IMG/VR virus record: IMGVR_UViG_3300042934_000594
Location: 1-64,000 of that record
Direction: 5' to 3' (one strand)
DNA: 64,000 nucleotides
Shown here piece by piece: positions 6,226 through 60,934 of this stretch (position 1 is the stretch's first letter; the number at the start of each line of letters is the position of its first letter). The position numbers were made by a program, and so were the translations under genes. The notes beneath the pieces are model-generated. The model saw only the letters and a program-made list of their open reading frames with translations, had not been told where the DNA came from and searched no databases.

Positions 6226-6564
6226 GTGGGATACGAGGTTGATGCAAAGTGTGCCTCGTGGTCCCTCACCGAACACGGCCGCGGTAAACGCGCGGTCGTG
6301 GTACGGACAGGGTGTTACGTGGTGGAACACATCTCAACGGGTAAGTTCATTGTGGCGTGCAGTAAGAATGTCACCGAAGAGGTCGACCTCACCATTCACC
6401 ACCTGTTGCAAGGTACGAGCAAGAATAAGGCGTTCAACCGGTTGGTTGCCACTGAGCCTGACTTGCGTCTGCTGGAGTACGCAACCCGTACGCTGGTCGA
6501 TGCCCGTAAGCTTGAAGCGGCGATTCGAAAGACGGTGACGCCTCGGTATTTACTCCTCAACTGA
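6226..6564 (+). CDS. degenerate GIY-YIG-like protein
   Basis: TGCYVVEHISTGKFIVACSKNV resembles the GIY...YIGSSxN hairpin; GTG start after AAGGA. Confidence 0.5.
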   Translation: MGYEVDAKCASWSLTEHGRGKRAVVVRTGCYVVEHISTGKFIVACSKNVTEEVDLTIHHLLQGTSKNKAFNRLVATEPDLRLLEYATRTLVDARKLEAAIRKTVTPRYLLLN

Positions 6565-8044: not shown

Positions 8045-8477
8045 AGCCCATTGCGTGGCAGGGCGCTACTGCATCCTACCCGGTCTGTACATCGAGGTGT
8101 CTACTCGGGGTACCGTGGGCACCCACGCAGGCTTTGTGCAGTTCTACCTGCGTGATGCGATGGACCGGCACGAGTGGCCAGCCACCAACACCATCTGGCT
8201 GAAGGTCGAGAACCTGTTGACTGAGCCTGAAACGGCGAATCTGCTCAACTGGCCTGAGGTCGTTAAGGCCTGGGTGGCGCTGTACCTGGCCGAGCTGCCA
8301 GCGTACGCCCGGGTGGACAACGTCTACCTCAACAAAAACCTGTTCCCTGCTGATTACGCGCCAGGGCATAAAACGGTTCATGGCGAACCGTTTGTGGACT
8401 TTGAAGGCAGTCGCAAATGGGGTGCGCTGGAGTGTCAGTACCCTGAATCCCCTTTCCCTGATGAGGACGTCACATGA
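8034..8477 (+). CDS. hypothetical protein
   Basis: Overlaps upstream stop; start uncertain (8022 or 8034). Confidence 0.65.
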   Translation: MTPKAHCVAGRYCILPGLYIEVSTRGTVGTHAGFVQFYLRDAMDRHEWPATNTIWLKVENLLTEPETANLLNWPEVVKAWVALYLAELPAYARVDNVYLNKNLFPADYAPGHKTVHGEPFVDFEGSRKWGALECQYPESPFPDEDVT

Positions 8478-9226
8478 AAGCTGCTGTCAAACTATTTCTG
8501 GACACCGAGTTCAACGGCACCAACGGTTGCCTGATTTCGGCGGCCCTGGTCTCAGCCGAAGGCCATGAGTGGTACGAGGTACTGGACACCGGTGACACCG
8601 AGCTGGTGCCTTGGGTGGTGGAGAATGTCATCCCGAACTTGGGGAAACCTGCGATCAGCATGGAGGCGTTCGAACAATCGCTCAGTAATTTCCTGAGTCA
8701 GTTCGGCTACGTGGAGTTCATCTACAACGCACACGCTGATAAGCGCTACCTGGATGCAATGCTGGATGGCCTTCAACGGCTGCCTATGCACCGTTTGTCC
8801 CGAGACGGTAAGTTGCATGCCCACCATGCGTTAATCCCTCACAACGCCCTCTCAGACGCCCGTGCTATCGTTTCCTACGTGGCCGGGGACGATCAAGTGA
8901 AGCATTTCGGTGTGACCGAGCGGGAAATGTTCATGGGTCTGTGGCGGGCAGGGTATCCGTTTGACCGGCGTGACGTATTGGTGGCCTGGGATACGGCCGA
9001 GGGCTTTGGCATCAAGGGTGCTATCGCCACCCTAGCACCCACGCACAATCACAAGACCCTGTCTGGCAGTATCCAGGTGATGATGCCTGAGAAGTTGCAG
9101 AACAGTGGGTACAGTGGCGGTGAAACCCCCAAGTGGGCGCACATGGTTGTGCTGTACCTACCGCGGGTAGCCGCAGCCCTCAATGTGATGGACATCGCCC
9201 AACATTCCCAGCGACTGGCGCGATGA
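8474..9226 (+). CDS. DEDDh 3'-5' exonuclease (Rv2179c/DUF5051-like) with extra C-terminal domain
   Basis: LFLDTEF (ExoI), ADKRYL (ExoII), HNALSDAR (ExoIII). Confidence 0.75.
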   Translation: MKAAVKLFLDTEFNGTNGCLISAALVSAEGHEWYEVLDTGDTELVPWVVENVIPNLGKPAISMEAFEQSLSNFLSQFGYVEFIYNAHADKRYLDAMLDGLQRLPMHRLSRDGKLHAHHALIPHNALSDARAIVSYVAGDDQVKHFGVTEREMFMGLWRAGYPFDRRDVLVAWDTAEGFGIKGAIATLAPTHNHKTLSGSIQVMMPEKLQNSGYSGGETPKWAHMVVLYLPRVAAALNVMDIAQHSQRLAR

Positions 9227-9253
9227 TATAACCCAACCCTCCTGGAGACTGTC

Positions 9254-9772
9254 ATGCCTACCACCCTTTACCACGGATCGATGTACGCCCAAGAAGAGCT
9301 GATGCCAGGCATCAAACGTTCAGGGGAGAAGGTTGAGTGGGACGGTACGGAATCCAACGAGTACCTTTACGCCACGACCGACCGTGAGACCGCGGTCAGT
9401 CAGGGTTTTGCCAGCGCCATGGAGAAGGTCTTCCCGGTTCGACGGTTTCGCACCGAAGGCCGGGACATCCACATCTTCCTGGAAGGCAAACACCCCACCC
9501 CTGAGCAACTTAAAAAGCTCACGGTAAACCTGTACACGATCCGTGTGCTGCCGCAAGACCAGTGGCGTAAAAATAACAACAAGGTCAATGGTTTGGATAC
9601 TGAGTGGACTACTCAACAGACCATCACCTCGGGCATTGAGTCGCGGGAGACCATTGACGTACCGACCTGGCTTAATGGACGCACCATTAAGTTCTTCGAC
9701 CACGTGGATGAAAACCCCAACAGCCACATTGTCCAACACACCCCGTTAACGAAGTACTTCTTTAAGAAATAA
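9254..9772 (+). CDS. ADP-ribosyltransferase-fold protein (Arr-like)
   Basis: LYHGS at strand 1, YLYAT at strand 2, followed by Ala-rich helix. Confidence 0.55.
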   Translation: MPTTLYHGSMYAQEELMPGIKRSGEKVEWDGTESNEYLYATTDRETAVSQGFASAMEKVFPVRRFRTEGRDIHIFLEGKHPTPEQLKKLTVNLYTIRVLPQDQWRKNNNKVNGLDTEWTTQQTITSGIESRETIDVPTWLNGRTIKFFDHVDENPNSHIVQHTPLTKYFFKK

Positions 9773-9780
9773 GGACCTGC

Positions 9781-10224
9781 ATGGACCGTTACGAACGCGA
9801 AGCTTATTGGACGGGTACCCGGCTGTTTCTGGCCTTGGTGGCCATGGGTATTCTGATGGCACTGGGCGGTTACGCCTGGAAGTACTTCATGGCCCCTGTG
9901 GCTGGGAAGGCCGAAGCGGAATGGCAACAAGAATCGGGTGCCAACCGCACCGCGCAGTACGACAAGTTCTTTGACCTGTGTGCAGCGATCCAGGGTTATG
10001 AATCCACGATCCGCATCCAGAGCGAAGCCTTGAAGACAGCCACTGCGCCTGAAGACCGTTCTCGCTTGACCACGGTGGTTGCAGGGGTGCGTGCACAGCG
10101 CGGCCGTGCGATTGCCCAATACAACGCCGACGCTCGCAAGAGCTACACCCAAGGGCGTTTTCTCGACGGGTCCCTGCCGACCCAACTCAATGATGCTGCG
10201 GAGCAAACACAATGCGTAAACTGA
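9781..10224 (+). CDS. membrane-anchored helical protein
   Basis: N-terminal TM helix, helical body with two Cys. Confidence 0.75.
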   Translation: MDRYEREAYWTGTRLFLALVAMGILMALGGYAWKYFMAPVAGKAEAEWQQESGANRTAQYDKFFDLCAAIQGYESTIRIQSEALKTATAPEDRSRLTTVVAGVRAQRGRAIAQYNADARKSYTQGRFLDGSLPTQLNDAAEQTQCVN

Positions 10225-10751
10225 TCTATCTGCTGTGCGGTCTGTTCCTGACCGCAGGTCTGCTGGGTAACACCAGTTGCAATCAGGAACGTCCAACGGC
10301 ACGTGAAACCAACGTGGTGGCGCAGCAGGATCTGATGACACGGGCTACCCAGGCCGTGCCGGTACCGCGTGTCAGCAACTTTCTCAATCGCGAAGCGGTG
10401 GCCAAGCAGGTCACACGCCTCGATGAGAAGGGTAAGCTCTTCTACATCTACCTCTTCGGCGACAACGGACAGCAGATGGGCTACTTCGTTGCGTACACCC
10501 GTCCCGTGGCGACCTGTTCACTCCTTACCCCACCGGACGACGTCTGGAAGTACGGCGACACCGGGCGCACCAGTCAGGCATTGAAAGCCCCAGGTCTGGG
10601 CGGTGTGTGGAACCCGGGTAACTGCGGTCCGAACTACTTCTTCTTCGATGCCTCCACCGATGCGTACATCGAGTTCGGTGACTTCAAGTACTTCATCAGT
10701 GACCAACCACTGAGCCTGAAAGCTGAACCGATTCACGTCAACACCAAGTAA
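10212..10751 (+). CDS. putative exported protein or lipoprotein
   Basis: Signal peptide ending in Cys (LTAGLLGNTSC); overlaps upstream gene by 13 nt. Confidence 0.7.
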   Translation: MRKLIYLLCGLFLTAGLLGNTSCNQERPTARETNVVAQQDLMTRATQAVPVPRVSNFLNREAVAKQVTRLDEKGKLFYIYLFGDNGQQMGYFVAYTRPVATCSLLTPPDDVWKYGDTGRTSQALKAPGLGGVWNPGNCGPNYFFFDASTDAYIEFGDFKYFISDQPLSLKAEPIHVNTK

Positions 10752-10760
10752 CAACGCACG

Positions 10761-10794
10761 GCAGTCCCTTCGGGGACTGCTGGCTTTATTTTTT
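10761..10794 (+). terminator. intrinsic terminator
   Basis: gcagtccc-ttcg-gggactgc plus T-rich tail. Confidence 0.7.
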
Positions 10795-10806
10795 CTAGGG
10801 ACGTTT

Positions 10807-11418
10807 ATGAATTTATCTAATACCGTTGTCGTCGATGCTCAAGGTCAGCCTCTGGCAGTCTACCGAGGTGAGCATGGGATGCACGATCATTTCATCCAAA
10901 GCCTATTACCTTCCATCTCTTTTGGTGATGAGGCAGCGGCGCGTCAATACGCCATGCACCCCAATCAACCTCACCTGCGGGCAGAACGACCCCGCATTCT
11001 GAAAGCCTATCTGAATATCACCAAGCCGGTGTTCAACCGCTCAGGCGACTCCTACGTTGACTACGACGATCTGGTGGAGTTGGTGGGGTTGCGATTGGCC
11101 AACCGGATGTTCTGCAAGTTTGCTGAAGTGGTCATGGCCACTGATGCTTGGGCGGACATGGTGGTGCACAGCCTCAAGGCCTGGCGTACGGTGGAATCAC
11201 TGATTGCTCAACGCTTGGACCTCATGTCACAGCTGTGTATTCAGGTCTACCCATTGCTGGATGATCCTGAGTTTATCGAGCACACACGCTCCTTGGGCTT
11301 TGACGGGGCCATTCACATGGGCAGCGGGTTTAACTCCGGGGCAGACGAGTACCGGGTGTTTGACCAAAATCAGATCGTCTTCATCGGTGAAGAACGTCTA
11401 CAGGGGTGCGCAGCATGA
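10807..11418 (+). CDS. ART-PolyVal-like ADP-ribosyltransferase-fold protein
   Basis: VYRG, ISF...A..YA, AYLNITKP, GFDGAI, EYRVFDQNQI pattern. Confidence 0.6.
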   Translation: MNLSNTVVVDAQGQPLAVYRGEHGMHDHFIQSLLPSISFGDEAAARQYAMHPNQPHLRAERPRILKAYLNITKPVFNRSGDSYVDYDDLVELVGLRLANRMFCKFAEVVMATDAWADMVVHSLKAWRTVESLIAQRLDLMSQLCIQVYPLLDDPEFIEHTRSLGFDGAIHMGSGFNSGADEYRVFDQNQIVFIGEERLQGCAA

Positions 11419-11654
11419 ACGGGGCTAACAAAGCAACCATCCGGGGATTGACCATCCGGGCCAAGAATACGTTGCGTGATCAGCTGGTGCGTTTCCTGGA
11501 AAGCAAACGCGACCTCAGCGGTAATGAGCAAATGGCTTTGAGCATCCTGCAAGCCGATGAGCGCCTGACCCTGACGGTGTCTGACACCCACCTCGCCCTA
11601 CAAGGGGTTGACCAGCAGGGTAAGTTCAGCAGCACTACCTTGCACTTGGTTTAA
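11415..11654 (+). CDS. hypothetical protein
   Basis: ATGA overlap. Confidence 0.65.
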   Translation: MNGANKATIRGLTIRAKNTLRDQLVRFLESKRDLSGNEQMALSILQADERLTLTVSDTHLALQGVDQQGKFSSTTLHLV

Positions 11655-11666
11655 CGTCTATATCAC
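11654..11666 (+). promoter_or_regulatory. candidate early promoter (ACGTCTATATCAC)
   Basis: Member of the CTATATnAC motif family, intergenic. Confidence 0.35.
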
Positions 11667-11695
11667 CCAGGTGTCCCTAGCCGTTTGGAGGACCC

Positions 11696-12208
11696 ATGGT
11701 CTACCCCATTGTGTTACAACGTCCCACCGGCACACGCCGGCGTGAGTACTTCGCGTTTAGTCAACAGGATTATCGGTTGACGCTGGATGAGTTCGTGCAG
11801 GTGTTGGACCGTTGTGACGAATGGGTGGTGGCTGCAACGCTGCACCACTACCACACCGTGGACGTCGCCACGCAACAGCGCGTCATGCGCGAATGGCAAG
11901 ACAGACTCAATAACCCCGCCATCCGCACCCAACGGACGGTGGACACCGAGGTTGCCCTACGGTACGCCCCCGCCCACATGCAGAAAGAGCATGGGTGGGC
12001 CTTGTTGTCCTGTCGAGCGACTTCCTTGGTGGTGAAAATCGCCAGGGATTCTTACTTACTGGACCTAAGCTATGGCAGAGTGATGGCGGTCTTTGCTTTT
12101 GACCCTATCCACCAAGTCCGCGTCGGTCAAAAGCTCCACACTCTGACCATTCCAGGCGATCACCCCGTTCTGGAATTGTTTGTTCAAGAACACACCCCCC
12201 TTGATTAA
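11696..12208 (+). CDS. hypothetical protein
   Basis: GGAGG RBS. Confidence 0.75.
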   Translation: MVYPIVLQRPTGTRRREYFAFSQQDYRLTLDEFVQVLDRCDEWVVAATLHHYHTVDVATQQRVMREWQDRLNNPAIRTQRTVDTEVALRYAPAHMQKEHGWALLSCRATSLVVKIARDSYLLDLSYGRVMAVFAFDPIHQVRVGQKLHTLTIPGDHPVLELFVQEHTPLD

Positions 12209-25203: not shown

Positions 25204-25279
25204 TCCATGATAGCTCAGTTGGTAGAGCAACGGACTGTTAATTCGTTGGTCCCTGGTTCGAGTCCAGGTCATGGAGCCA
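25204..25279 (+). tRNA. trnN: tRNA-Asn(GTT)
   Basis: TCCATGA/TCATGGA acceptor, acgga-CTGTTAA-ttcgt, TTCGAGT, encoded CCA. Confidence 0.95.
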
Positions 25280-25283
25280 CATT

Positions 25284-25313
25284 CATACGGCCTCCCGCAA
25301 GGGAGGCTTTATG
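25284..25313 (+). terminator. GCCTCCC-family hairpin closing the tRNA operon
   Basis: gcctccc-gcaa-gggaggc-tttatg. Confidence 0.7.
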
Positions 25314-25339
25314 TCGGATCTGTATTTAAGGAGTGGAGT

Positions 25340-25660
25340 ATGCTGTCAGTTCGCCTGGATAAAGAGTGTGACGAGTACCTGCGAAAATTGGCAGACCTCG
25401 AAGACCGCTCCATCAACAACCTGATCAAGCGCATGATCCTGGAGCATAAGCGTTACAACCCACTGGCTGAGGACGGTGGCATCCTACAGCTGGAACGGGG
25501 CGTCAAGCATGCGTTCATGATTGTCTTGGACGGTAAGGTCGTAGGGACACTCAACCGCGGTCCTGGTGGGTTACTGGCCTTGGAGCTGGACACTACTAAC
25601 CTAGGTTCTCCTGTGCCACATTGGTCTAAAGACCTGCCAAGCGGTGCTGTGACGGACTGA
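25340..25660 (+). CDS. ribbon-helix-helix (Arc/CopG-like) DNA-binding protein
   Basis: MLSVRLDKECDEYLRKLADLEDRSINNLIKRMI RHH pattern; AAGGAG RBS. Confidence 0.75.
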   Translation: MLSVRLDKECDEYLRKLADLEDRSINNLIKRMILEHKRYNPLAEDGGILQLERGVKHAFMIVLDGKVVGTLNRGPGGLLALELDTTNLGSPVPHWSKDLPSGAVTD

Positions 25661-25671
25661 CCTGGTTACTG

Positions 25672-25699
25672 AAAGAATACTGACCAGGTCATGGTATAC
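25672..25699 (+). promoter_or_regulatory. second copy of bipartite promoter (AAAGAATACTG-N8-ATGGTATAC)
   Basis: Identical boxes and spacing to 24541-24568; ends 18 nt upstream of L2. Confidence 0.65.
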
Positions 25700-25716
25700 G
25701 AAGCAGTTATGCAATC

Positions 25717-25823
25717 CCCTGGGTAGCTCAGTTGGTTAGAGCGTTGCCGTTGTGAGAGTCCGTTAGTCCGGGTGCTTTTGCAGCAGTGAAGGCCGATGGT
25801 TCAAATCCATCCCTCGGGGCCTA
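25717..25823 (+). ncRNA. tRNA-like RNA L2 (intact D/T arms, expanded anticodon domain, CCTA end)
   Basis: ccctggg/cctcggg acceptor with one mismatch; TAGCTCAGTTGGTTAGAGC D-arm; gatgg-TTCAAAT-ccatc T-arm; about 30 extra nt between the arms; own promoter and terminator. Confidence 0.7.
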
Positions 25824-25839
25824 TTTTGTGAATTATACA

Positions 25840-25864
25840 GCCTCCTTCACGGGAGGCTTTATAT
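25840..25864 (+). terminator. GCCTCC-family hairpin
   Basis: gcctcc-ttcacg-ggaggc-tttat directly after L2. Confidence 0.65.
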
Positions 25865-25880
25865 CGTCGAGGCATTAGCC

Positions 25881-26117
25881 ATGTTTGGTTGCTGTAAGTT
25901 CGCCATGCAACATGTGTACTGCGTTGATTACGGGGACAAACCCGATTTGGAAGTACTGAAGTCAGAATACGGTGATGAAATCTCCTTGGAGCAACGGCCC
26001 AATCTGCGCAACCCACAGGACATACCGCTTAAATGGGTGATGGTGAGCCCAGGTAAAGAAGAGGACGTCTGCACGTGTGGTTGCCACGTGCGCAACGGCC
26101 CAGCGATCATGTGTTAG
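25881..26117 (+). CDS. hypothetical Cys-containing protein
   Basis: GAGG RBS; 78 aa. Confidence 0.6.
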   Translation: MFGCCKFAMQHVYCVDYGDKPDLEVLKSEYGDEISLEQRPNLRNPQDIPLKWVMVSPGKEEDVCTCGCHVRNGPAIMC

Positions 26118-26125
26118 GAGCAGGT

Positions 26126-26482
26126 ATGGACGAGCGTTACGAATATGTCCGACTGGAAGTACAATACCAGATTCCCAAGATACTGCTGGACTATCTAGGC
26201 AACGTCGACGATTCCATCCGTAAACACTTGGCAAAGTTTGATGGCTGGGAAGACGCACGCATATTGAAGCAAGTTAGCCGTTACGTGGAGTGCCGTATTC
26301 GTCAAGAGATTCTGGCTAAGTACGAAAAGCTGGAAGTCCAACCCGATTACCTCGATGGGCACTGGGTTGAGCTGATCTTGGCATATCGGGACGCCGCTGA
26401 AGAGGCCAACGACGTCAGGGCAGAGCTTGAAACCATCCGGCGTATGCAGTTTAGAGCAACCATCTTCAAAGGGTCATGTTAA
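26126..26482 (+). CDS. hypothetical protein
   Basis: AGGAG RBS. Confidence 0.7.
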   Translation: MDERYEYVRLEVQYQIPKILLDYLGNVDDSIRKHLAKFDGWEDARILKQVSRYVECRIRQEILAKYEKLEVQPDYLDGHWVELILAYRDAAEEANDVRAELETIRRMQFRATIFKGSC

Positions 26483-27033
26483 TGGACGACGACTACATCA
26501 AGAAACATTTCGGTAACCCACCCGTGCCTGAGGTGGTATCGCATATTCCGCTGATGCGCAATAGTGAGACTGTGGAGGCTACCGCAACCCCTGACATTGC
26601 TCGCTTGGGTGCGGCTATCGACGCCATCGCCAAGGCTACGAAGGGCATGGACAAAGAAGAACTCCTCAAGCGTATGGATCGTTACCTGGAGGACATCAAG
26701 GAAAAGCGTCTGCCCATTCACGTGGGTCCTGCTATTCAAACCAGCGACTACAGTTGGATGGTTTCGATCCCTATCACCGATAAGGGTATTCGTATCCTGC
26801 TGGAGGACGCGGTAATCCACATCGTGAAACAGCACGACCGTGAGGCCGTGCTGTCGTCTGCCGAGTTTGCTGGGAAGATCCAGTTAGAAGTGCTGGCTTA
26901 CCTGCAAGCGATGTTGGATTTCCAGGAATCGAACCTGGAGGTCGATGTTACCTTCAAAGCCTATGAGGGGGAAATCACATACACTGCTAACCTCTACGCC
27001 TTCGGCATCGGCACTCGGGTACATTTTCAATGA
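26482..27033 (+). CDS. hypothetical protein
   Basis: TAATG overlap. Confidence 0.7.
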   Translation: MDDDYIKKHFGNPPVPEVVSHIPLMRNSETVEATATPDIARLGAAIDAIAKATKGMDKEELLKRMDRYLEDIKEKRLPIHVGPAIQTSDYSWMVSIPITDKGIRILLEDAVIHIVKQHDREAVLSSAEFAGKIQLEVLAYLQAMLDFQESNLEVDVTFKAYEGEITYTANLYAFGIGTRVHFQ

Positions 27034-27413
27034 CCGACCAATTCACGATGGATCAGCCGGGGTACGAAGCTGCCTACCAGTGGCTTAACCAAACCCATCA
27101 GTTTCACCTGCTGGATGCTATTCCTAAGTCCGATGGTTACACGGTCATCACCTTGGCCAATACACTGTGGGTGCAGCAGAACGGCGGCGTAGAACGTGAG
27201 TTCGAGATCTGGATGGAAGGCTACCAGGCCACCGGTGAGAGCGGTGGGGCACAACTGGTCGGTAAGTCCACCGGGTGGACCTTCTACGACGCGGTTAAGA
27301 ACCTGGCAGACCGGTCACACAAGGGTAAGTTTGACTGGTACGGTGGCCGTTGGAGTATTTGGGCCTGTCGTTTGTTCGACAATGAAGCCGACGCTCGCAA
27401 GAGCTTTGGCTAA
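27030..27413 (+). CDS. conserved phage hypothetical protein (IW.EGY.ATG / W.CRLFDNE..AR.SFG motif)
   Basis: ATGA overlap; motif recalled from many phage genomes. Confidence 0.75.
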   Translation: MTDQFTMDQPGYEAAYQWLNQTHQFHLLDAIPKSDGYTVITLANTLWVQQNGGVEREFEIWMEGYQATGESGGAQLVGKSTGWTFYDAVKNLADRSHKGKFDWYGGRWSIWACRLFDNEADARKSFG

Positions 27414-27422
27414 GGATCTGCT

Positions 27423-27644
27423 ATGCGTTACGCGCTAGAGCAACGGCTGCGGTTGATTGACTTCCTCCTGGCGCAGTATGGTTGGTTGCACCGCAAGATG
27501 GTCATGGACTACTACGCCATCACCATGGCAGCAGCATCCAAAGACTTTGCTGATTATATGAAACTGGCGCCTGACAACATGGCTTACAACTTAAAGGCTA
27601 AGCGCTACGAGCGTCAGTCTGGGTTTAAGCGGTTGTTTGAGTAG
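27423..27644 (+). CDS. stand-alone CapW/BrxR-type winged helix-turn-helix (no WYL domain)
   Basis: EQRLRLIDFLL..G...R..VMD.Y.I....ASKD...Y..LAP.NM.Y....K.Y.....F..LF matches the N-terminal wHTH of CapW-like WYL regulators. Confidence 0.75.
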   Translation: MRYALEQRLRLIDFLLAQYGWLHRKMVMDYYAITMAAASKDFADYMKLAPDNMAYNLKAKRYERQSGFKRLFE

Positions 27645-27813
27645 TCGGTACCGTCCATGACCCTTGGGCCTTAGGGTGCCAATCTCGCTGTGTAGGATGC
27701 CGGCGCATCTGAGCATGGGAGCCCCCTTCGAGAGGTGGGCAAGTGTAGAGGCAGGACAGACGATGTGGTCGCGTGCGACCTGCGCTGGACTGGGGTCAGC
27801 TTATTCCGTACAG

Positions 27814-27840
27814 ATCCCTCCCGCTTGGGAGGGGTTTATT
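27814..27840 (+). terminator. CCCTCCC-family hairpin
   Basis: ccctccc-gctt-gggaggg-gtttattt. Confidence 0.65.
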
Positions 27841-27863
27841 TCGCAACGTTCAGGCGACCTGAT

Positions 27864-28490
27864 ATGAAATGCAAGCACTGTGACCAACCCATGGTCTTTG
27901 AATTGGGGGTGGACAACGGAACAGATGAAGAAGCGTACTGCTACAACCTACACAGCTGTCGCGATTGCGGTACCCTCCTTAAGGAAGACATCCACAATCG
28001 ACTGCTGATCTGGATTCCCCCAAGCAATCAGATTCTTCGTGAGGGTAGTGAGGACCTTGACAGTCCTTTCAAACTGCCTCCCGTGACGCACGCACCGTTG
28101 GGGGTGCAGGAGTTCCTAAAGATGTTGCGCTCGCGCATCAACCAAGGGTACATGCCTTCAGCGACGGGGGAACAACAATACAACAGCAAGCCTGAGTACT
28201 TGCGTAACCTGCAACTGATTTTGGACAAGCCTGGGCAAAGTGGACTGTCGTATGGCTCAGGCTTTTATGCACAGGACGGCGCTTACCTGGAGTACACAGG
28301 GGGCAAGAAGGTTCATGACATTTACTTGTTCTTGGATGTGAGTAATGTGGCAGTGTTGGTGAACCTGTTGACCGATGAAGCCTACGTGGCCTTAAGCGGT
28401 GAAACCATTGGGGCGTGGGAACCGTGGACAGCACAGTTGCTGTCCGTAGATCGCCACCTGTTGGCGGAGAAGATTGACGCGTATTGCTAA
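27864..28490 (+). CDS. hypothetical protein with N-terminal Zn ribbon
   Basis: MKCKHC...CRDCG. Confidence 0.7.
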   Translation: MKCKHCDQPMVFELGVDNGTDEEAYCYNLHSCRDCGTLLKEDIHNRLLIWIPPSNQILREGSEDLDSPFKLPPVTHAPLGVQEFLKMLRSRINQGYMPSATGEQQYNSKPEYLRNLQLILDKPGQSGLSYGSGFYAQDGAYLEYTGGKKVHDIYLFLDVSNVAVLVNLLTDEAYVALSGETIGAWEPWTAQLLSVDRHLLAEKIDAYC

Positions 28491-59656: not shown

Positions 59657-59665
59657 GGAGTGGAT

Positions 59666-60934
59666 ATGACTGATGAGAAGCGCCCCCTGATCCTGTGGTC
59701 CGGGGGTTTGGATTCAACGTTCCTGATGTACCAACAGCTGCTCAATGGGCCGGTGGATTACATTGTCATGGACGGGGGTCAAAGCCGGTCTAAGATCCGC
59801 ATGGAGGAGGAAGCGCGCACCAAGGCACTGAATTGGTTCGCTGCGCAGGGCCTGCCCTACCCGCATCAATTGAACACGGCCGATCCCATGACGCTGGCTA
59901 AGATGCCCGGCATCAGTTGGTCGCAAACGATCCCGTGGTTGATCGGTGCGTTGTATGCCGCGGACCATCGTAAGCACCACAGTGTGATGATCGCCTACGT
60001 GATCGGTGATGAACCAGTGCACCTGAAGGACGTCTTCAGTCAAACCTTCGAAGGCCTGCAACGGATTTCCAAACACGGTGACCCCGTTCCCCTGTGCTTC
60101 CCGTTCCTGGATGGGTTCGTCAACAAGCGCCGGATCTTGCACGAGATCCCCCGTGGCCTGCTCGAGTGCGTCTGGTACTGCGAGCTGCCTGAGAAAATCA
60201 ACGTCACCCCGTGTCAGTTTGAGATGGTCAGTGGCAAGCGGTGTGAATGGAAGGCTAACGATCAGTTGGTGATTGAGGTCATCCAGGAAGGGGATGTGGA
60301 ACGCGTCGAATTGAGTGCGCTTTACCTTCAACCTGAACACCGGGTGGTCATGCCCGACGGCTCTGTCGAGGTGGTCAGCAAAGCGGTCGAGCAAATCGAC
60401 AACGTGTACATCTGGCAGCGTTGCAATAACTGTCCGGCGTGTGTGACGCATGACCTGGAACTGGTGCGCTATCAGCGCCTGGGTAAACACATCGGCTATC
60501 GCAAGGATGTGGGCGTGGAGGATCCTGTACCTGCCCCGGGTAAAGAGCTGCCACCCCCGGACGCCACCGTGTTCCTGGTGGCCACCGCTGAGCAAGTCTT
60601 GACCATCGCGCAAAGCGGTCTCACCGCCGGCACCCAGTTCCACGCCACCTCAGAACAGGCCGCCCTGGAAGTCAACAACTGGCTGGCGGGTGGGTTCCCA
60701 GGGGACGACATCCGCGTGATCGAAGTGGACTACCATTCGGGCATGCGTGGGCAAGACGCTCCAGCCAAAGACTGGATCTTAGACTGTGCGTTGAGCACAG
60801 GTTTCATCCGCCGCCTGCGCGATCGCAATGGCACCCAACTGCTCTGGCCCGTCCCGTGGGAAGAAACAAGCACCCCGGACGACGTCGTCGAGCAACTCGT
60901 CGAACTGGCAAACACACTCAAAGAGGAGGTCTAA
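59666..60934 (+). CDS. QueC-like PP-loop ATPase with 80-aa spacer in the Zn site and C-terminal ART/Tpt1-like domain
   Basis: ILWSGGLDST PP-loop; WYC...CNNCPAC Zn ligands; extra about 120-aa C-terminal domain. Confidence 0.75.
   Translation: MTDEKRPLILWSGGLDSTFLMYQQLLNGPVDYIVMDGGQSRSKIRMEEEARTKALNWFAAQGLPYPHQLNTADPMTLAKMPGISWSQTIPWLIGALYAADHRKHHSVMIAYVIGDEPVHLKDVFSQTFEGLQRISKHGDPVPLCFPFLDGFVNKRRILHEIPRGLLECVWYCELPEKINVTPCQFEMVSGKRCEWKANDQLVIEVIQEGDVERVELSALYLQPEHRVVMPDGSVEVVSKAVEQIDNVYIWQRCNNCPACVTHDLELVRYQRLGKHIGYRKDVGVEDPVPAPGKELPPPDATVFLVATAEQVLTIAQSGLTAGTQFHATSEQAALEVNNWLAGGFPGDDIRVIEVDYHSGMRGQDAPAKDWILDCALSTGFIRRLRDRNGTQLLWPVPWEETSTPDDVVEQLVELANTLKEEV

What the first reader, a model, noticed from the sequence alone, without database searches (positions are those of the whole stretch)
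27423..27644. Stand-alone CapW/BrxR winged helix without its WYL sensor: candidate defence-operon silencer
The 73-aa protein matches the N-terminal wHTH of CapW-type WYL repressors along its whole length (EQRL..I.F.L...G...R...MD.F.I....AS.D...Y..LAP.NM.Y....K.Y.....F..LF) and stops where the WYL domain would begin. CapW and BrxR repress CBASS, BREX and related operons and are released when WYL binds nucleic-acid ligands (established). A sensor-less copy in a phage could keep defence operons off or interfere with the host regulator (inference). Loss of the dimerisation domains may limit DNA binding.
Basis: partly seen in the sequence, partly recalled or inferred. Interest (0 to 1): 0.75.

Follow-up and report, generated by a model that had tools for sequence, protein, structure and literature searches.

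The report
Sensor-less BrxR/CapW DNA-binding domain in phage
A soil jumbo phage carries a complete 73-residue gene that is only the DNA-binding head of the bacterial BrxR/CapW regulators of anti-phage defence, without their damage sensor; it belongs to a large, undescribed, mostly phage-borne family that may keep host defence operons switched off, which is untested.

Summary
ORF 27423-27644(+) encodes a 73-aa protein homologous along its whole length to the N-terminal winged helix (wHTH; Pfam WHD_BrxR, PF26109) of CapW/BrxR. A family profile hits CapW and BrxR structures at E 1.9e-22 to 4e-12. The AlphaFold model (pLDDT 97) overlays them at TM 0.95-0.97, rmsd 0.6-0.8 A.

No WYL or C-terminal domain exists in any frame of the 269-kb phage genome.

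It is not a recent truncation. About 96 clusters (50% identity) of ~73-80-aa proteins end at the same position. They fall on one side of a weakly supported branch from the full-length regulators. They occur in unrelated virulent and temperate phages and share no neighbour with the window.

DNA-contact residues known from BrxR/CapW mutagenesis are kept. Residues typical of full-length proteins are replaced, and a homodimer is predicted (0.57 against best control 0.20).

No operator was found, the host is unknown, and published work shows derepression is not needed for first-round defence.

This is a new variant of a known kind, and interesting.

The parts
27423..27644 (+). Gene for the 73-aa stand-alone wHTH protein (WHD_BrxR/PF26109-type), including the TAG stop
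   Evidence: ORF list; profile hits to CapW/BrxR structures; fold match at TM 0.95-0.97; homologues carry precomputed PF26109:WHD_BrxR
27412..27416 (+). Shine-Dalgarno AAGGA, 6 nt before the ATG, overlapping the TAA stop (27411-27413) of the upstream gene
   Evidence: Read directly from the sequence
27429..27479 (+). Helix alpha1 (residues 3-19). It carries R8, the equivalent of BrxR-Efer R17 and BrxR-Acin R11 (phosphate contact). It also carries family-specific R10, L15, Q18 and Y19, which replace the E, R, invariant W and E of full-length regulators.
   Evidence: DSSP on the model; column statistics; PMC9122601 and PMC9122589 for R17/R11
27525..27566 (+). Recognition helix alpha3 (residues 35-48). 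With T34 it gives I-T-M-A-A-A-S-K-D-F-A-D-Y, where CapW has I-S-x-P-Q-A-S-x-D. It is closest to the I-Q-S-A-A-A-S-R-D-L-A-L-Y helix of a widespread Pseudomonas/Burkholderia-type BrxR.
   Evidence: DNA-contact positions from PMC9122588 (Sm CapW S42/Q45/S47) and PMC9122589 (BrxR S37-Q40)
27579..27614 (+). Beta-hairpin wing (residues 53-64) with conserved Y55, K60 and Y62, equivalent to BrxR-Acin H59, K64 and Y66 DNA contacts
   Evidence: PMC9122589
27816..27845 (+). Intrinsic-terminator hairpin CCCTCCC-N4-GGGAGGG plus T-run. It closes the transcription unit about 170 nt after the gene.
   Evidence: the same hairpin type recurs at least 40 times in the genome
25881..27413 (+). Four co-directional upstream ORFs of unknown function (78, 135, 185, 127 aa). 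They lie between the terminator at 25834-25863 and the wHTH gene, which is the last gene of the unit.

Best explanation
Shown: the gene encodes a complete, stand-alone winged-helix DNA-binding domain of the BrxR/CapW family (Pfam WHD_BrxR) with no WYL sensor or C-terminal dimerisation domain anywhere in the phage genome. It belongs to an old, diversified family of ~73-80-aa proteins found mostly in phages and prophages. Inferred: it forms a homodimer through helices alpha1 and alpha2 and binds a (pseudo)palindromic DNA site with the same residues BrxR and CapW use. Because it has no ssDNA-sensing WYL domain, the DNA-damage or infection signal that releases the host regulators cannot dislodge it. 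The most likely target is the operator of a host BrxR/CapW-type regulator at the head of a defence island. The phage protein would then act as a ligand-blind 'super-repressor' that holds CBASS, BREX, restriction-modification or similar operons at basal level during infection or prophage induction. Confidence is about 0.95 for the identity and architecture, about 0.7 for DNA binding as a dimer, and about 0.4 for the host-defence target.
For: Homology and fold. No sensor. The family is real and old. The representative search gave 1930 hits at E<=1e-3, and the best ~75 are short proteins whose match ends at their C-terminus. All 17 IMG/VR loci stop at the same position. The 96 short rows lie on one side of a branch from the 24 full-length rows, SH-aLRT 83. 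DNA-contact residues are kept in the short family: R8 100%, R24 90% (= Sm CapW R32), S34 72%, Q37 61%, S/T39 91%, K/R60 96%, Y62 89%. Mutating these positions abolishes binding or repression in CapW and BrxR (PMC9122588, PMC9122601, PMC9122589). Residues typical of full-length proteins are replaced (W3->Y, E10->R, R15->L, invariant W18->Q/H, E19->Y, D26->A/V, P70->R), and positions 10, 18, 19 and 26 lie in the predicted interface. Homodimer prediction: score 0.57, best of 3 controls 0.20; in calibration the mark was reached by 20 of 30 proteins solved as pairs of one chain and 1 of 23 solved as single chains. Accessory-gene pattern: homologues sit in a related 233-kb jumbo phage, the virulent Stenotrophomonas siphophage Sonora, lambdoid-like temperate phages and prophages, and none shares a neighbour with the window; they lie among small early genes and orphan methylases. 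Of 50,697 cultured phages, only Sonora has one. Recognition-helix types in the short family ('S-x-P-Q-A-S-x-D' and 'x-A-T-A-T-R-D'/'A-A-A-S-K-D') mirror the two main types in full-length host regulators. In both lysogens that carry a short and a full-length copy, the types match. One phage lineage carries two tandem short paralogues, one of each type. A full-length BrxR with a helix like the window's heads a helicase-DprA-type I R-M island in Pseudomonas. The only recurrent palindrome in the phage genome is its terminator hairpin, so there is no sign of an internal regulon.
Against: No operator or target was identified, and the host of this phage is unknown. This copy differs from the CapW consensus at base-reading positions 34-37, so mimicry of a specific host regulator is not shown. 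The matched-helix evidence rests on n=2, and the common motif has a high baseline identity. Two of the four lysogens with a short copy have no full-length regulator. Published work shows that CapW/BrxR derepression is not needed to block a first infection (PMC9122588; bioRxiv 10.1101/2025.11.13.688357), so locking repression may give little benefit within one lytic cycle. phiKZ-like jumbo phages are, from general knowledge, already shielded from many DNA-targeting systems; nucleus formation was not tested here. The homodimer pass may reflect the model's memory of the solved BrxR/CapW dimers. The short/long split has only weak support (83, 75 columns).
Confidence: 0.4

Rival explanations
1. Phage-internal regulator, for example an Aca-like autorepressor. 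The wHTH dimer binds an operator in the phage's own genome and tunes the small-gene operon of which it is the last gene, or another phage promoter. Host defence is not its target.
For: Small HTH proteins in phages commonly regulate phage operons (general knowledge). The gene is the last of a five-gene unit of small unknown ORFs bounded by terminators, an Aca-like position. Its variable neighbours resemble the guilt-by-association pattern of Aca genes.
Against: Inverted repeats are not enriched and no palindrome is shared within 450 bp upstream of the gene in 22 loci. The only recurrent perfect palindrome in the 269-kb genome is the terminator hairpin. The gene has no promoter region of its own, starting 9 nt after the upstream stop. 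There is no PHROG or PADLOC link to anti-CRISPR-associated families. The domain is specifically the defence-regulator subtype, not a generic phage HTH.
Confidence: 0.27
2. A host-takeover DNA-binding protein with a host target unrelated to BrxR/CapW operators, such as other promoters or nucleoid sites. It merely reuses this wHTH scaffold.
For: The base-reading positions are the most variable part of the short family (entropy 3.65 at position 35), and this copy departs from the CapW motif. Two of four lysogens with a short copy lack any full-length regulator.
Against: The helix types track those of full-length regulators rather than drifting freely. Residues R8, R24, S39, K60 and Y62 are conserved exactly as in the defence regulators.
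Confidence: 0.15
3. A protein-binding decoy. The free wHTH docks onto the host regulator, for example onto the WYL/linker surface that normally holds the partner's wHTH, or forms mixed dimers. It thereby alters the host regulator rather than binding DNA itself.
For: In CapW each WYL domain packs mainly against the wHTH of the opposite protomer (PMC9122588). Helix alpha1 is unusually conserved in the short family, which could mark a protein interface.
Against: The residues typical of full-length proteins that would be expected to make such contacts (W3, R15, invariant W18, E19, D26) are the ones lost in the short family. The DNA-contact residues are retained. A self-dimer is predicted.
Confidence: 0.08
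4. A non-functional remnant: a fragment of a captured host capW/brxR gene that is decaying.
For: It corresponds to a 5' fragment of a longer bacterial gene. Gene GC is 51% against 56% for the genome.
Against: Nearly 100 diverged clusters share the same stop position, with invariant residues at 40-55% identity. It has a good Shine-Dalgarno sequence. No WYL remnant exists in any frame. The same sequence is held by two soil samples from different studies.
Confidence: 0.02

Closest known systems
CapW (CBASS-associated wHTH-WYL-WCX repressor; PDB 7TB5, 7TB6, 9C5G)
   Same: The N-terminal wHTH is the same domain. The window protein is 30-35% identical to CapW structures over the aligned fold and 38% identical to a full-length CapW-like protein; rmsd is 0.6 A and the profile E-value is 1.9e-22. 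R8, R24 (= Sm CapW R32), S39, K60 and Y62 are conserved. Most members of the short family share the S-x-P-Q-A-S-x-D recognition motif.
   Different: There is no linker helix, WYL domain or WCX domain, so it cannot sense ssDNA or be released allosterically. It is encoded by phages, not upstream of a CBASS operon. Residues typical of full-length proteins (W3, R15, W18, E19, D26, P70) are replaced. This copy has T-M-A-A at the S-x-P-Q positions.
BrxR (BREX and defence-island wHTH-WYL-CTD repressor; PDB 7QFZ, 7T8K/7T8L)
   Same: Same wHTH fold (TM 0.96 to 7QFZ, 33% identity). R8 aligns with the arginine whose mutation abolishes repression (BrxR-Efer R17A). The window's A-A-A-S-K-D helix resembles the A-A-A-S-R-D helix of a widespread Pseudomonas/Burkholderia-type BrxR that heads a helicase-DprA-type I R-M island.
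   Different: It lacks the WYL and BrxR_CTD domains and the domain-swapped dimer architecture. It is not next to any defence system in this phage.
Aca proteins (anti-CRISPR-associated HTH repressors of phage anti-defence operons)
   Same: A small stand-alone (w)HTH protein, phage-borne, at the 3' end of an operon of small unknown genes, with no conserved neighbours.
   Different: No sequence link to Aca families was found. No inverted-repeat operator lies near the operon. The domain is homologous to host defence regulators, not to Aca families.
Phage counter-defence proteins such as OrbA (anti-BREX) or Ocr
   Same: If the leading hypothesis is right, the biological role is the same: it lowers host immunity.
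   Different: Those proteins inhibit defence proteins directly. This one would act on transcription by copying the host regulator's DNA-binding head. I found no described precedent for that in the held literature.

Membership tests
WHD_BrxR winged-helix domain family (Pfam PF26109) | Significant sequence homology to the N-terminal wHTH of BrxR/CapW | tested here: met
   Profile against PDB: E 1.9e-22 to 4.2e-12, on residues ~8-92 only. BLASTP: E 1e-14 and 1e-10. Close homologues carry precomputed PF26109:WHD_BrxR. PF26109 is missing from the local Pfam copy, which explains the empty single-sequence scans.
WHD_BrxR winged-helix domain family (Pfam PF26109) | Three-helix winged-helix fold superposable on BrxR/CapW | tested here: met
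   AF2 pLDDT 97.3; H3-19, H24-31, H35-48 and a beta-hairpin at 53-64. Foldseek TMq 0.95-0.97, rmsd 0.6-0.8 A over 71-73 residues; the next fold scores 0.67.
WHD_BrxR winged-helix domain family (Pfam PF26109) | Conservation of experimentally defined DNA-contact residues | tested here: met
   R8, R24, S39, K60 and Y62 are present; S34->T is conservative; Q37->A also occurs in a natural full-length BrxR type (PMC9122588, PMC9122589, PMC9122601). Actual DNA binding was not tested.
CapW/BrxR wHTH-WYL-WCX defence regulators | Central WYL ligand-binding domain | tested here: not met
   PF13280 finds nothing in six frames of the 269-kb genome, with a positive control. Full-length queries match only residues 15-88 and 15-82.
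CapW/BrxR wHTH-WYL-WCX defence regulators | C-terminal WCX / BrxR_CTD dimerisation domain | tested here: not met
   The ORF ends at residue 73 and is followed by an untranslated stretch and a terminator.
CapW/BrxR wHTH-WYL-WCX defence regulators | Encoded at the head of a defence system or island | tested here: not met
   The neighbours are phage ORFs of unknown function, tRNAs, ribonucleotide reductase and structural genes. Only one homologue (P0016) lies near a BrxC-like island, behind an integrase.
CapW/BrxR wHTH-WYL-WCX defence regulators | Binds a palindromic operator overlapping a promoter and represses it | not testable with these tools
   This needs EMSA or reporter assays. No candidate operator was found near the gene.
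Aca-type anti-defence operon autorepressors | Small HTH gene directly downstream of anti-defence genes, with inverted-repeat operators at the operon promoter | tested here: inconclusive
   It is the last gene of a small-ORF operon, but the upstream genes have no known function. No operator-like inverted repeats are enriched.

The most novel reading that the evidence does not exclude
Phages of many kinds carry sensor-blind copies of the DNA-binding head of the host's own defence-island regulators. These dimerise on their own and occupy BrxR/CapW operators, so that the ssDNA or damage signal made during infection or prophage induction can no longer switch on CBASS, BREX, R-M or similar islands. 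This would be a transcriptional, regulator-mimicry form of counter-defence. Helix variants, and sometimes two tandem paralogues, would be matched to different host regulator classes.
Probability: 0.35. Interest if true: 0.85.

Novelty: new variant of a known kind. Interest (0 to 1): 0.62.

Why it matters
BrxR/CapW-type WYL repressors control a large share of bacterial defence islands. Recent work shows that their derepression after a failed infection primes cells against later phages. A phage protein that copies only the DNA-binding head of these regulators would be the first example of counter-defence by transcriptional mimicry. It would also explain why a defence-regulator domain is scattered across unrelated phages. 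Whichever target proves right, the family gives a minimal, ligand-independent version of the BrxR/CapW wHTH that probably dimerises on its own. That is useful for dissecting operator recognition, and possibly as a tool to hold defence islands in the off state. The hypothesis can be tested directly with an existing cultured pair: Stenotrophomonas phage Sonora gp088 and the published S. maltophilia CapW operator.

Tried and rejected
- **Single-sequence family scans.** Pfam, NCBIfam and PADLOC gave nothing, and PHROGs gave only a weak unknown family. This is a library gap, because PF26109 is not in the local Pfam copy. It is not evidence against homology.
- **Frameshifted or separate WYL/WCX domain.** Rejected.
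- **Recent truncation or pseudogene.** Rejected on family-wide conservation.
- **Conserved partner gene.** An all-against-all BLAST of neighbours across 18 loci found no partner gene shared with the window or across the lineages; the only shared neighbours are among a few closely related contigs, and some also carry a tandem second paralogue.
- **Local operators.** Palindromes within 450 bp upstream in 22 loci occur at background density, with no shared motif. Inverted repeats in 25250-27900 are terminators or weak.
- **Phage-wide operator regulon.** Only the terminator hairpin recurs.
- **Structured RNA downstream.** The 27645-27863 spacer folds with z -0.84 and has no Rfam hit.
- **Extending the co-residence test.** A scan of 401 genomes of the order of one lysogen found 26 with matches, nearly all of full length, and no further short copies. 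The test stays at n=2.
- **Diverse helix types.** A search seeded with a full-length BrxR returned only near-identical proteins.
- **Expression evidence.** Only DNA runs from soil hold the region.
- **Literature.** No description of a WYL-less phage BrxR/CapW wHTH was found in the held library.
- **Not tested.** Whether this phage forms a nucleus (chimallin), and the geometry of the predicted dimer relative to the BrxR-DNA complex (no coordinates available).

Full report
**1. The observation**

The window holds an ORF at 27423-27644 (+) of 73 codons with an ATG start and TAG stop. The frame is open for only 76 codons, so there is no hidden N-terminal extension. An AAGGA Shine-Dalgarno sequence lies 6 nt upstream and overlaps the TAA stop of the preceding gene.

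Single-sequence scans of Pfam, NCBIfam and PADLOC returned nothing. This turned out to be a library gap. Close homologues carry the precomputed domain PF26109, which another tool names WHD_BrxR, and that model is absent from the local Pfam copy.

A profile of 19 homologues, and later of 98, hits only five distinct PDB sequences significantly. All are CapW or BrxR, and all match on their N-terminal ~80 residues:

| PDB entry | Protein | E-value |
|---|---|---|
| 7tb5 | CapW | 1.9e-22 |
| 7tb6 | CapW | 6.3e-22 |
| 7qfz | BrxR | 2.5e-17 |
| 9c5g | CapW | 2.6e-14 |
| 7t8k | BrxR | 4.2e-12 |

Direct BLASTP of the window protein against two full-length regulators taken from bacterial genomes gives 38% identity (E 1e-14) and 33% identity (E 1e-10). 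In both cases the match covers their residues ~15-85.

An AlphaFold2 model built on the 98-sequence alignment has pLDDT 97.3. Its topology is H1-(b)-H2-H3-beta hairpin. Foldseek places it on the BrxR/CapW wHTH at TMq 0.95-0.97 and rmsd 0.6-0.8 A over all 73 residues, while the best unrelated fold reaches 0.67.

**2. No sensor anywhere**

The WYL model PF13280 finds nothing in six frames of the whole 269,430-bp virus record, which is about 90% complete. The same search rings in 9 of 14 control genomes. Two full-length regulators used as queries against the phage genome match only the 73-aa ORF and stop at its TAG.

The next ORF (27864-28490, 208 aa) has no Pfam or PHROG match. Between the two lies a ~220-nt spacer that ends in a terminator hairpin at 27816-27845.

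**3. It is a family, not an accident**

The word-index search found 19 proteins of 72-120 aa. The exhaustive search of representatives found 1930 proteins at E<=1e-3. The ~75 best are short proteins whose match ends at their own C-terminus, and full-length ~290-305-aa regulators appear only from E~1e-17.

All 17 IMG/VR loci carrying a relative stop within a few codons of the same position. In a maximum-likelihood tree of the domain, 96 short sequences lie on one side of a branch and all 24 full-length sequences on the other. Support is only SH-aLRT 83 on 75 columns, so the split is neither shown nor rejected.

The carriers are diverse:
- a 233-kb jumbo phage related to this one (tail sheath 65% identical), where the gene has different neighbours;
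- the cultured virulent Stenotrophomonas siphophage Sonora, the only hit among 50,697 phage records, where it sits in a long array of small early genes;
- lambdoid-like and other temperate phages;
- a replication-module context next to orphan methylases;
- prophages in Dechloromonas, Luteimonas, Frateuria and Geobacter genomes.

No neighbour of the window gene recurs in any other locus; shared neighbours appear only among a few closely related contigs. In 401 genomes of one lysogen's order, 26 had a match. Nearly all of these were of full length, and only the seed genome had the short form. The short form is thus overwhelmingly phage-associated.

**4. The phage**

The window encodes the following:
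- a tail sheath;
- a large terminase;
- class I ribonucleotide reductase;
- an NAD-dependent ligase;
- a cluster of tRNA genes;
- several phiKZ-type virion proteins.

The sheath is 57% identical to that of Pseudomonas phage PhiPA3 and its relatives. This is a soil-derived, phiKZ-like jumbo myovirus of unknown host with 56% GC. Nucleus formation was not tested.

The wHTH gene is the last of five co-directional small ORFs lying between two terminator hairpins.

**5. What the sequence says about mechanism**

I mapped published functional residues through the alignments.
- BrxR-Efer R17 (R17A abolishes repression; PMC9122601) and BrxR-Acin R11 correspond to R8 here. R8 is invariant in both short and long sets.
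- Sm CapW R32 (R32A abolishes binding; PMC9122588) corresponds to R24, present in 90% of short sequences.
- Sm CapW S42/Q45/S47 and BrxR-Acin S37-Q40 (base contacts; PMC9122589) correspond to positions 34, 37 and 39. In the short family these are S 72%, Q 61% and S/T 91%.
- The wing contacts K64 and Y66 correspond to K60 and Y62 (96% K/R; 89% Y).

The DNA-binding surface is therefore under the same constraint as in the host regulators.

Several residues are typical of full-length proteins (54-100% of sequences, W18 invariant) and are replaced in the short family: W3->Y, E10->R, R15->L, invariant W18->Q/H, E19->Y, D26->A/V and P70->R. In CapW each WYL domain packs against the partner's wHTH (PMC9122588), which may explain why these positions are free to change once the WYL domain is gone. 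That link is my inference.

A homodimer prediction passed its mark. The score was 0.57 and the best of 3 controls 0.20. In calibration the mark was reached by 20 of 30 proteins solved as pairs of one chain and by 1 of 23 solved as single chains. The interface is symmetric and comprises residues 10, 14, 17-19, 22-23, 26, 29-30, 32 and 73. It overlaps four of the family-specific substitutions (positions 10, 18, 19 and 26).

The pass may partly reflect the model's memory of solved BrxR/CapW dimers, and I could not inspect the geometry.

**6. Which DNA?**

This is the open step. I found no support for a local or phage-wide operator.
- Palindromes upstream of the gene in 22 loci occur at background density and share no motif.
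- The only recurrent perfect inverted repeat in the 269-kb genome is the CCCTCCC-N4-GGGAGGG terminator hairpin.

Several indirect findings favour host BrxR/CapW operators.
- (a) The domain is the defence-regulator subtype specifically.
- (b) The short family's scaffold is homogeneous, but its recognition helix comes in types that mirror the main types among full-length regulators. These are 'I-S-x-P-Q-A-S-x-D' (CapW-like) and 'x-A-(A/T)-A-(S/T)-(R/K)-D' (a BrxR type).
- (c) In the two lysogens that hold both a short and a full-length copy, the helices are of the same type: ISTPQASLDLRAY beside ISIPQASLDLARY, and IGPATATRDFAQY beside IQSAAASRDLALY.
- (d) One phage lineage carries two tandem short paralogues, one of each type.
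- (e) The window's own helix, ITMAAASKDFADY, is closest to IQSAAASRDLALY. That helix belongs to a BrxR that is 85-91% identical across Pseudomonas, Burkholderia and Alcaligenes and heads a helicase-DprA-type I R-M island on a mobile element.
- (f) Sonora infects S. maltophilia, the species whose CapW-CBASS operator was characterised (PMC9122588).

A biological rationale exists. CapW and BrxR are released by ssDNA or DNA damage (PMC11662680), which is also the signal that accompanies prophage induction and infection. A head without a sensor would stay bound.

**7. Why caution is needed**

- The matched-helix evidence is n=2 against a high baseline.
- Two of the four lysogens have no full-length regulator.
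- This copy deviates from the CapW motif.
- The host is unknown.
- Published data show that derepression is not required to stop a first infection (PMC9122588; bioRxiv 10.1101/2025.11.13.688357). The benefit would therefore lie mainly in preventing priming or damage-induced up-regulation.
- phiKZ-like phages are, from general knowledge, already protected from many DNA-targeting systems.

The chief rival is an Aca-like or other phage-internal regulator. I rate it about 0.27, against about 0.40 for the host-operator model.

**8. Comparison and novelty**

The protein is a member of the WHD_BrxR domain family: sequence, fold and contact residues were all tested and met. It is not a member of the CapW/BrxR regulator family as defined by wHTH-WYL-WCX architecture and a position at the head of a defence system; those features were tested and not met.

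I found no description of WYL-less, phage-borne BrxR/CapW heads in the held literature. I class it as a new variant of a known kind. It is a sensor-less, probably self-dimerising, phage-associated subfamily whose function is unproven but directly testable.

Noticed in passing
window 25717-25819 (+): A fifth tRNA-like element next to the four-tRNA cluster. It matches Rfam tRNA at 39.5 bits (gathering score 29) but was not called by ARAGORN. At 103 nt it may have an intron or a long extra arm.
   Followed up: no
window 27816-27845, 25284-25313, 25834-25863, 21984, 22306, 30514 and others; at least 40 copies genome-wide: A recurrent hairpin, CCCTCCC/GCCTCCC-N4-GGGAGGG/GGGAGGC, followed by TTTAT. 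It is the only over-represented palindrome in the 269-kb genome (18 copies of one half-site against at most 2 in shuffles). It most likely marks the phage's intrinsic terminators, possibly coupled to downstream promoters.
   Followed up: partly
window 25271-25657 (+): [quoted passage not shown] It is another small DNA-binding protein, about 1.8 kb upstream of the wHTH gene.
   Followed up: no
L013:5989-6216 and 6251-6523 (same arrangement in L012, L015, L016, L018): Two stand-alone WHD_BrxR paralogues in tandem (75 and 90 aa, 44% identical). Their recognition helices differ: I-S-I-P-C-A-S-N-D and T-S-A-T-A-T-R-D.
   Followed up: partly
L063:6001-6279 and 8046-11771: A short homologue (P0016, 92 aa) lies at the end of a prophage. 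It is 1.7 kb from a BrxC-PglY_N/DUF6079 ATPase island that follows an integrase and an HTH_17 gene. This is the only case found near a defence-like locus.
   Followed up: no
L066:10001-20906: A full-length BrxR (85-91% identical across Pseudomonas, Burkholderia and Alcaligenes; 6209 relatives) heads a conserved island of DEAD/ResIII helicase, DprA-like protein and type I R-M genes, next to AlpA and YagK/YfjJ genes. Its recognition helix resembles the window protein's.
   Followed up: partly
window 59660-60931 (+): A QueC-like queuosine/7-deazaguanine biosynthesis gene (phrog_1550, E 2.5e-21). This hints at DNA base modification in this jumbo phage.
   Followed up: no
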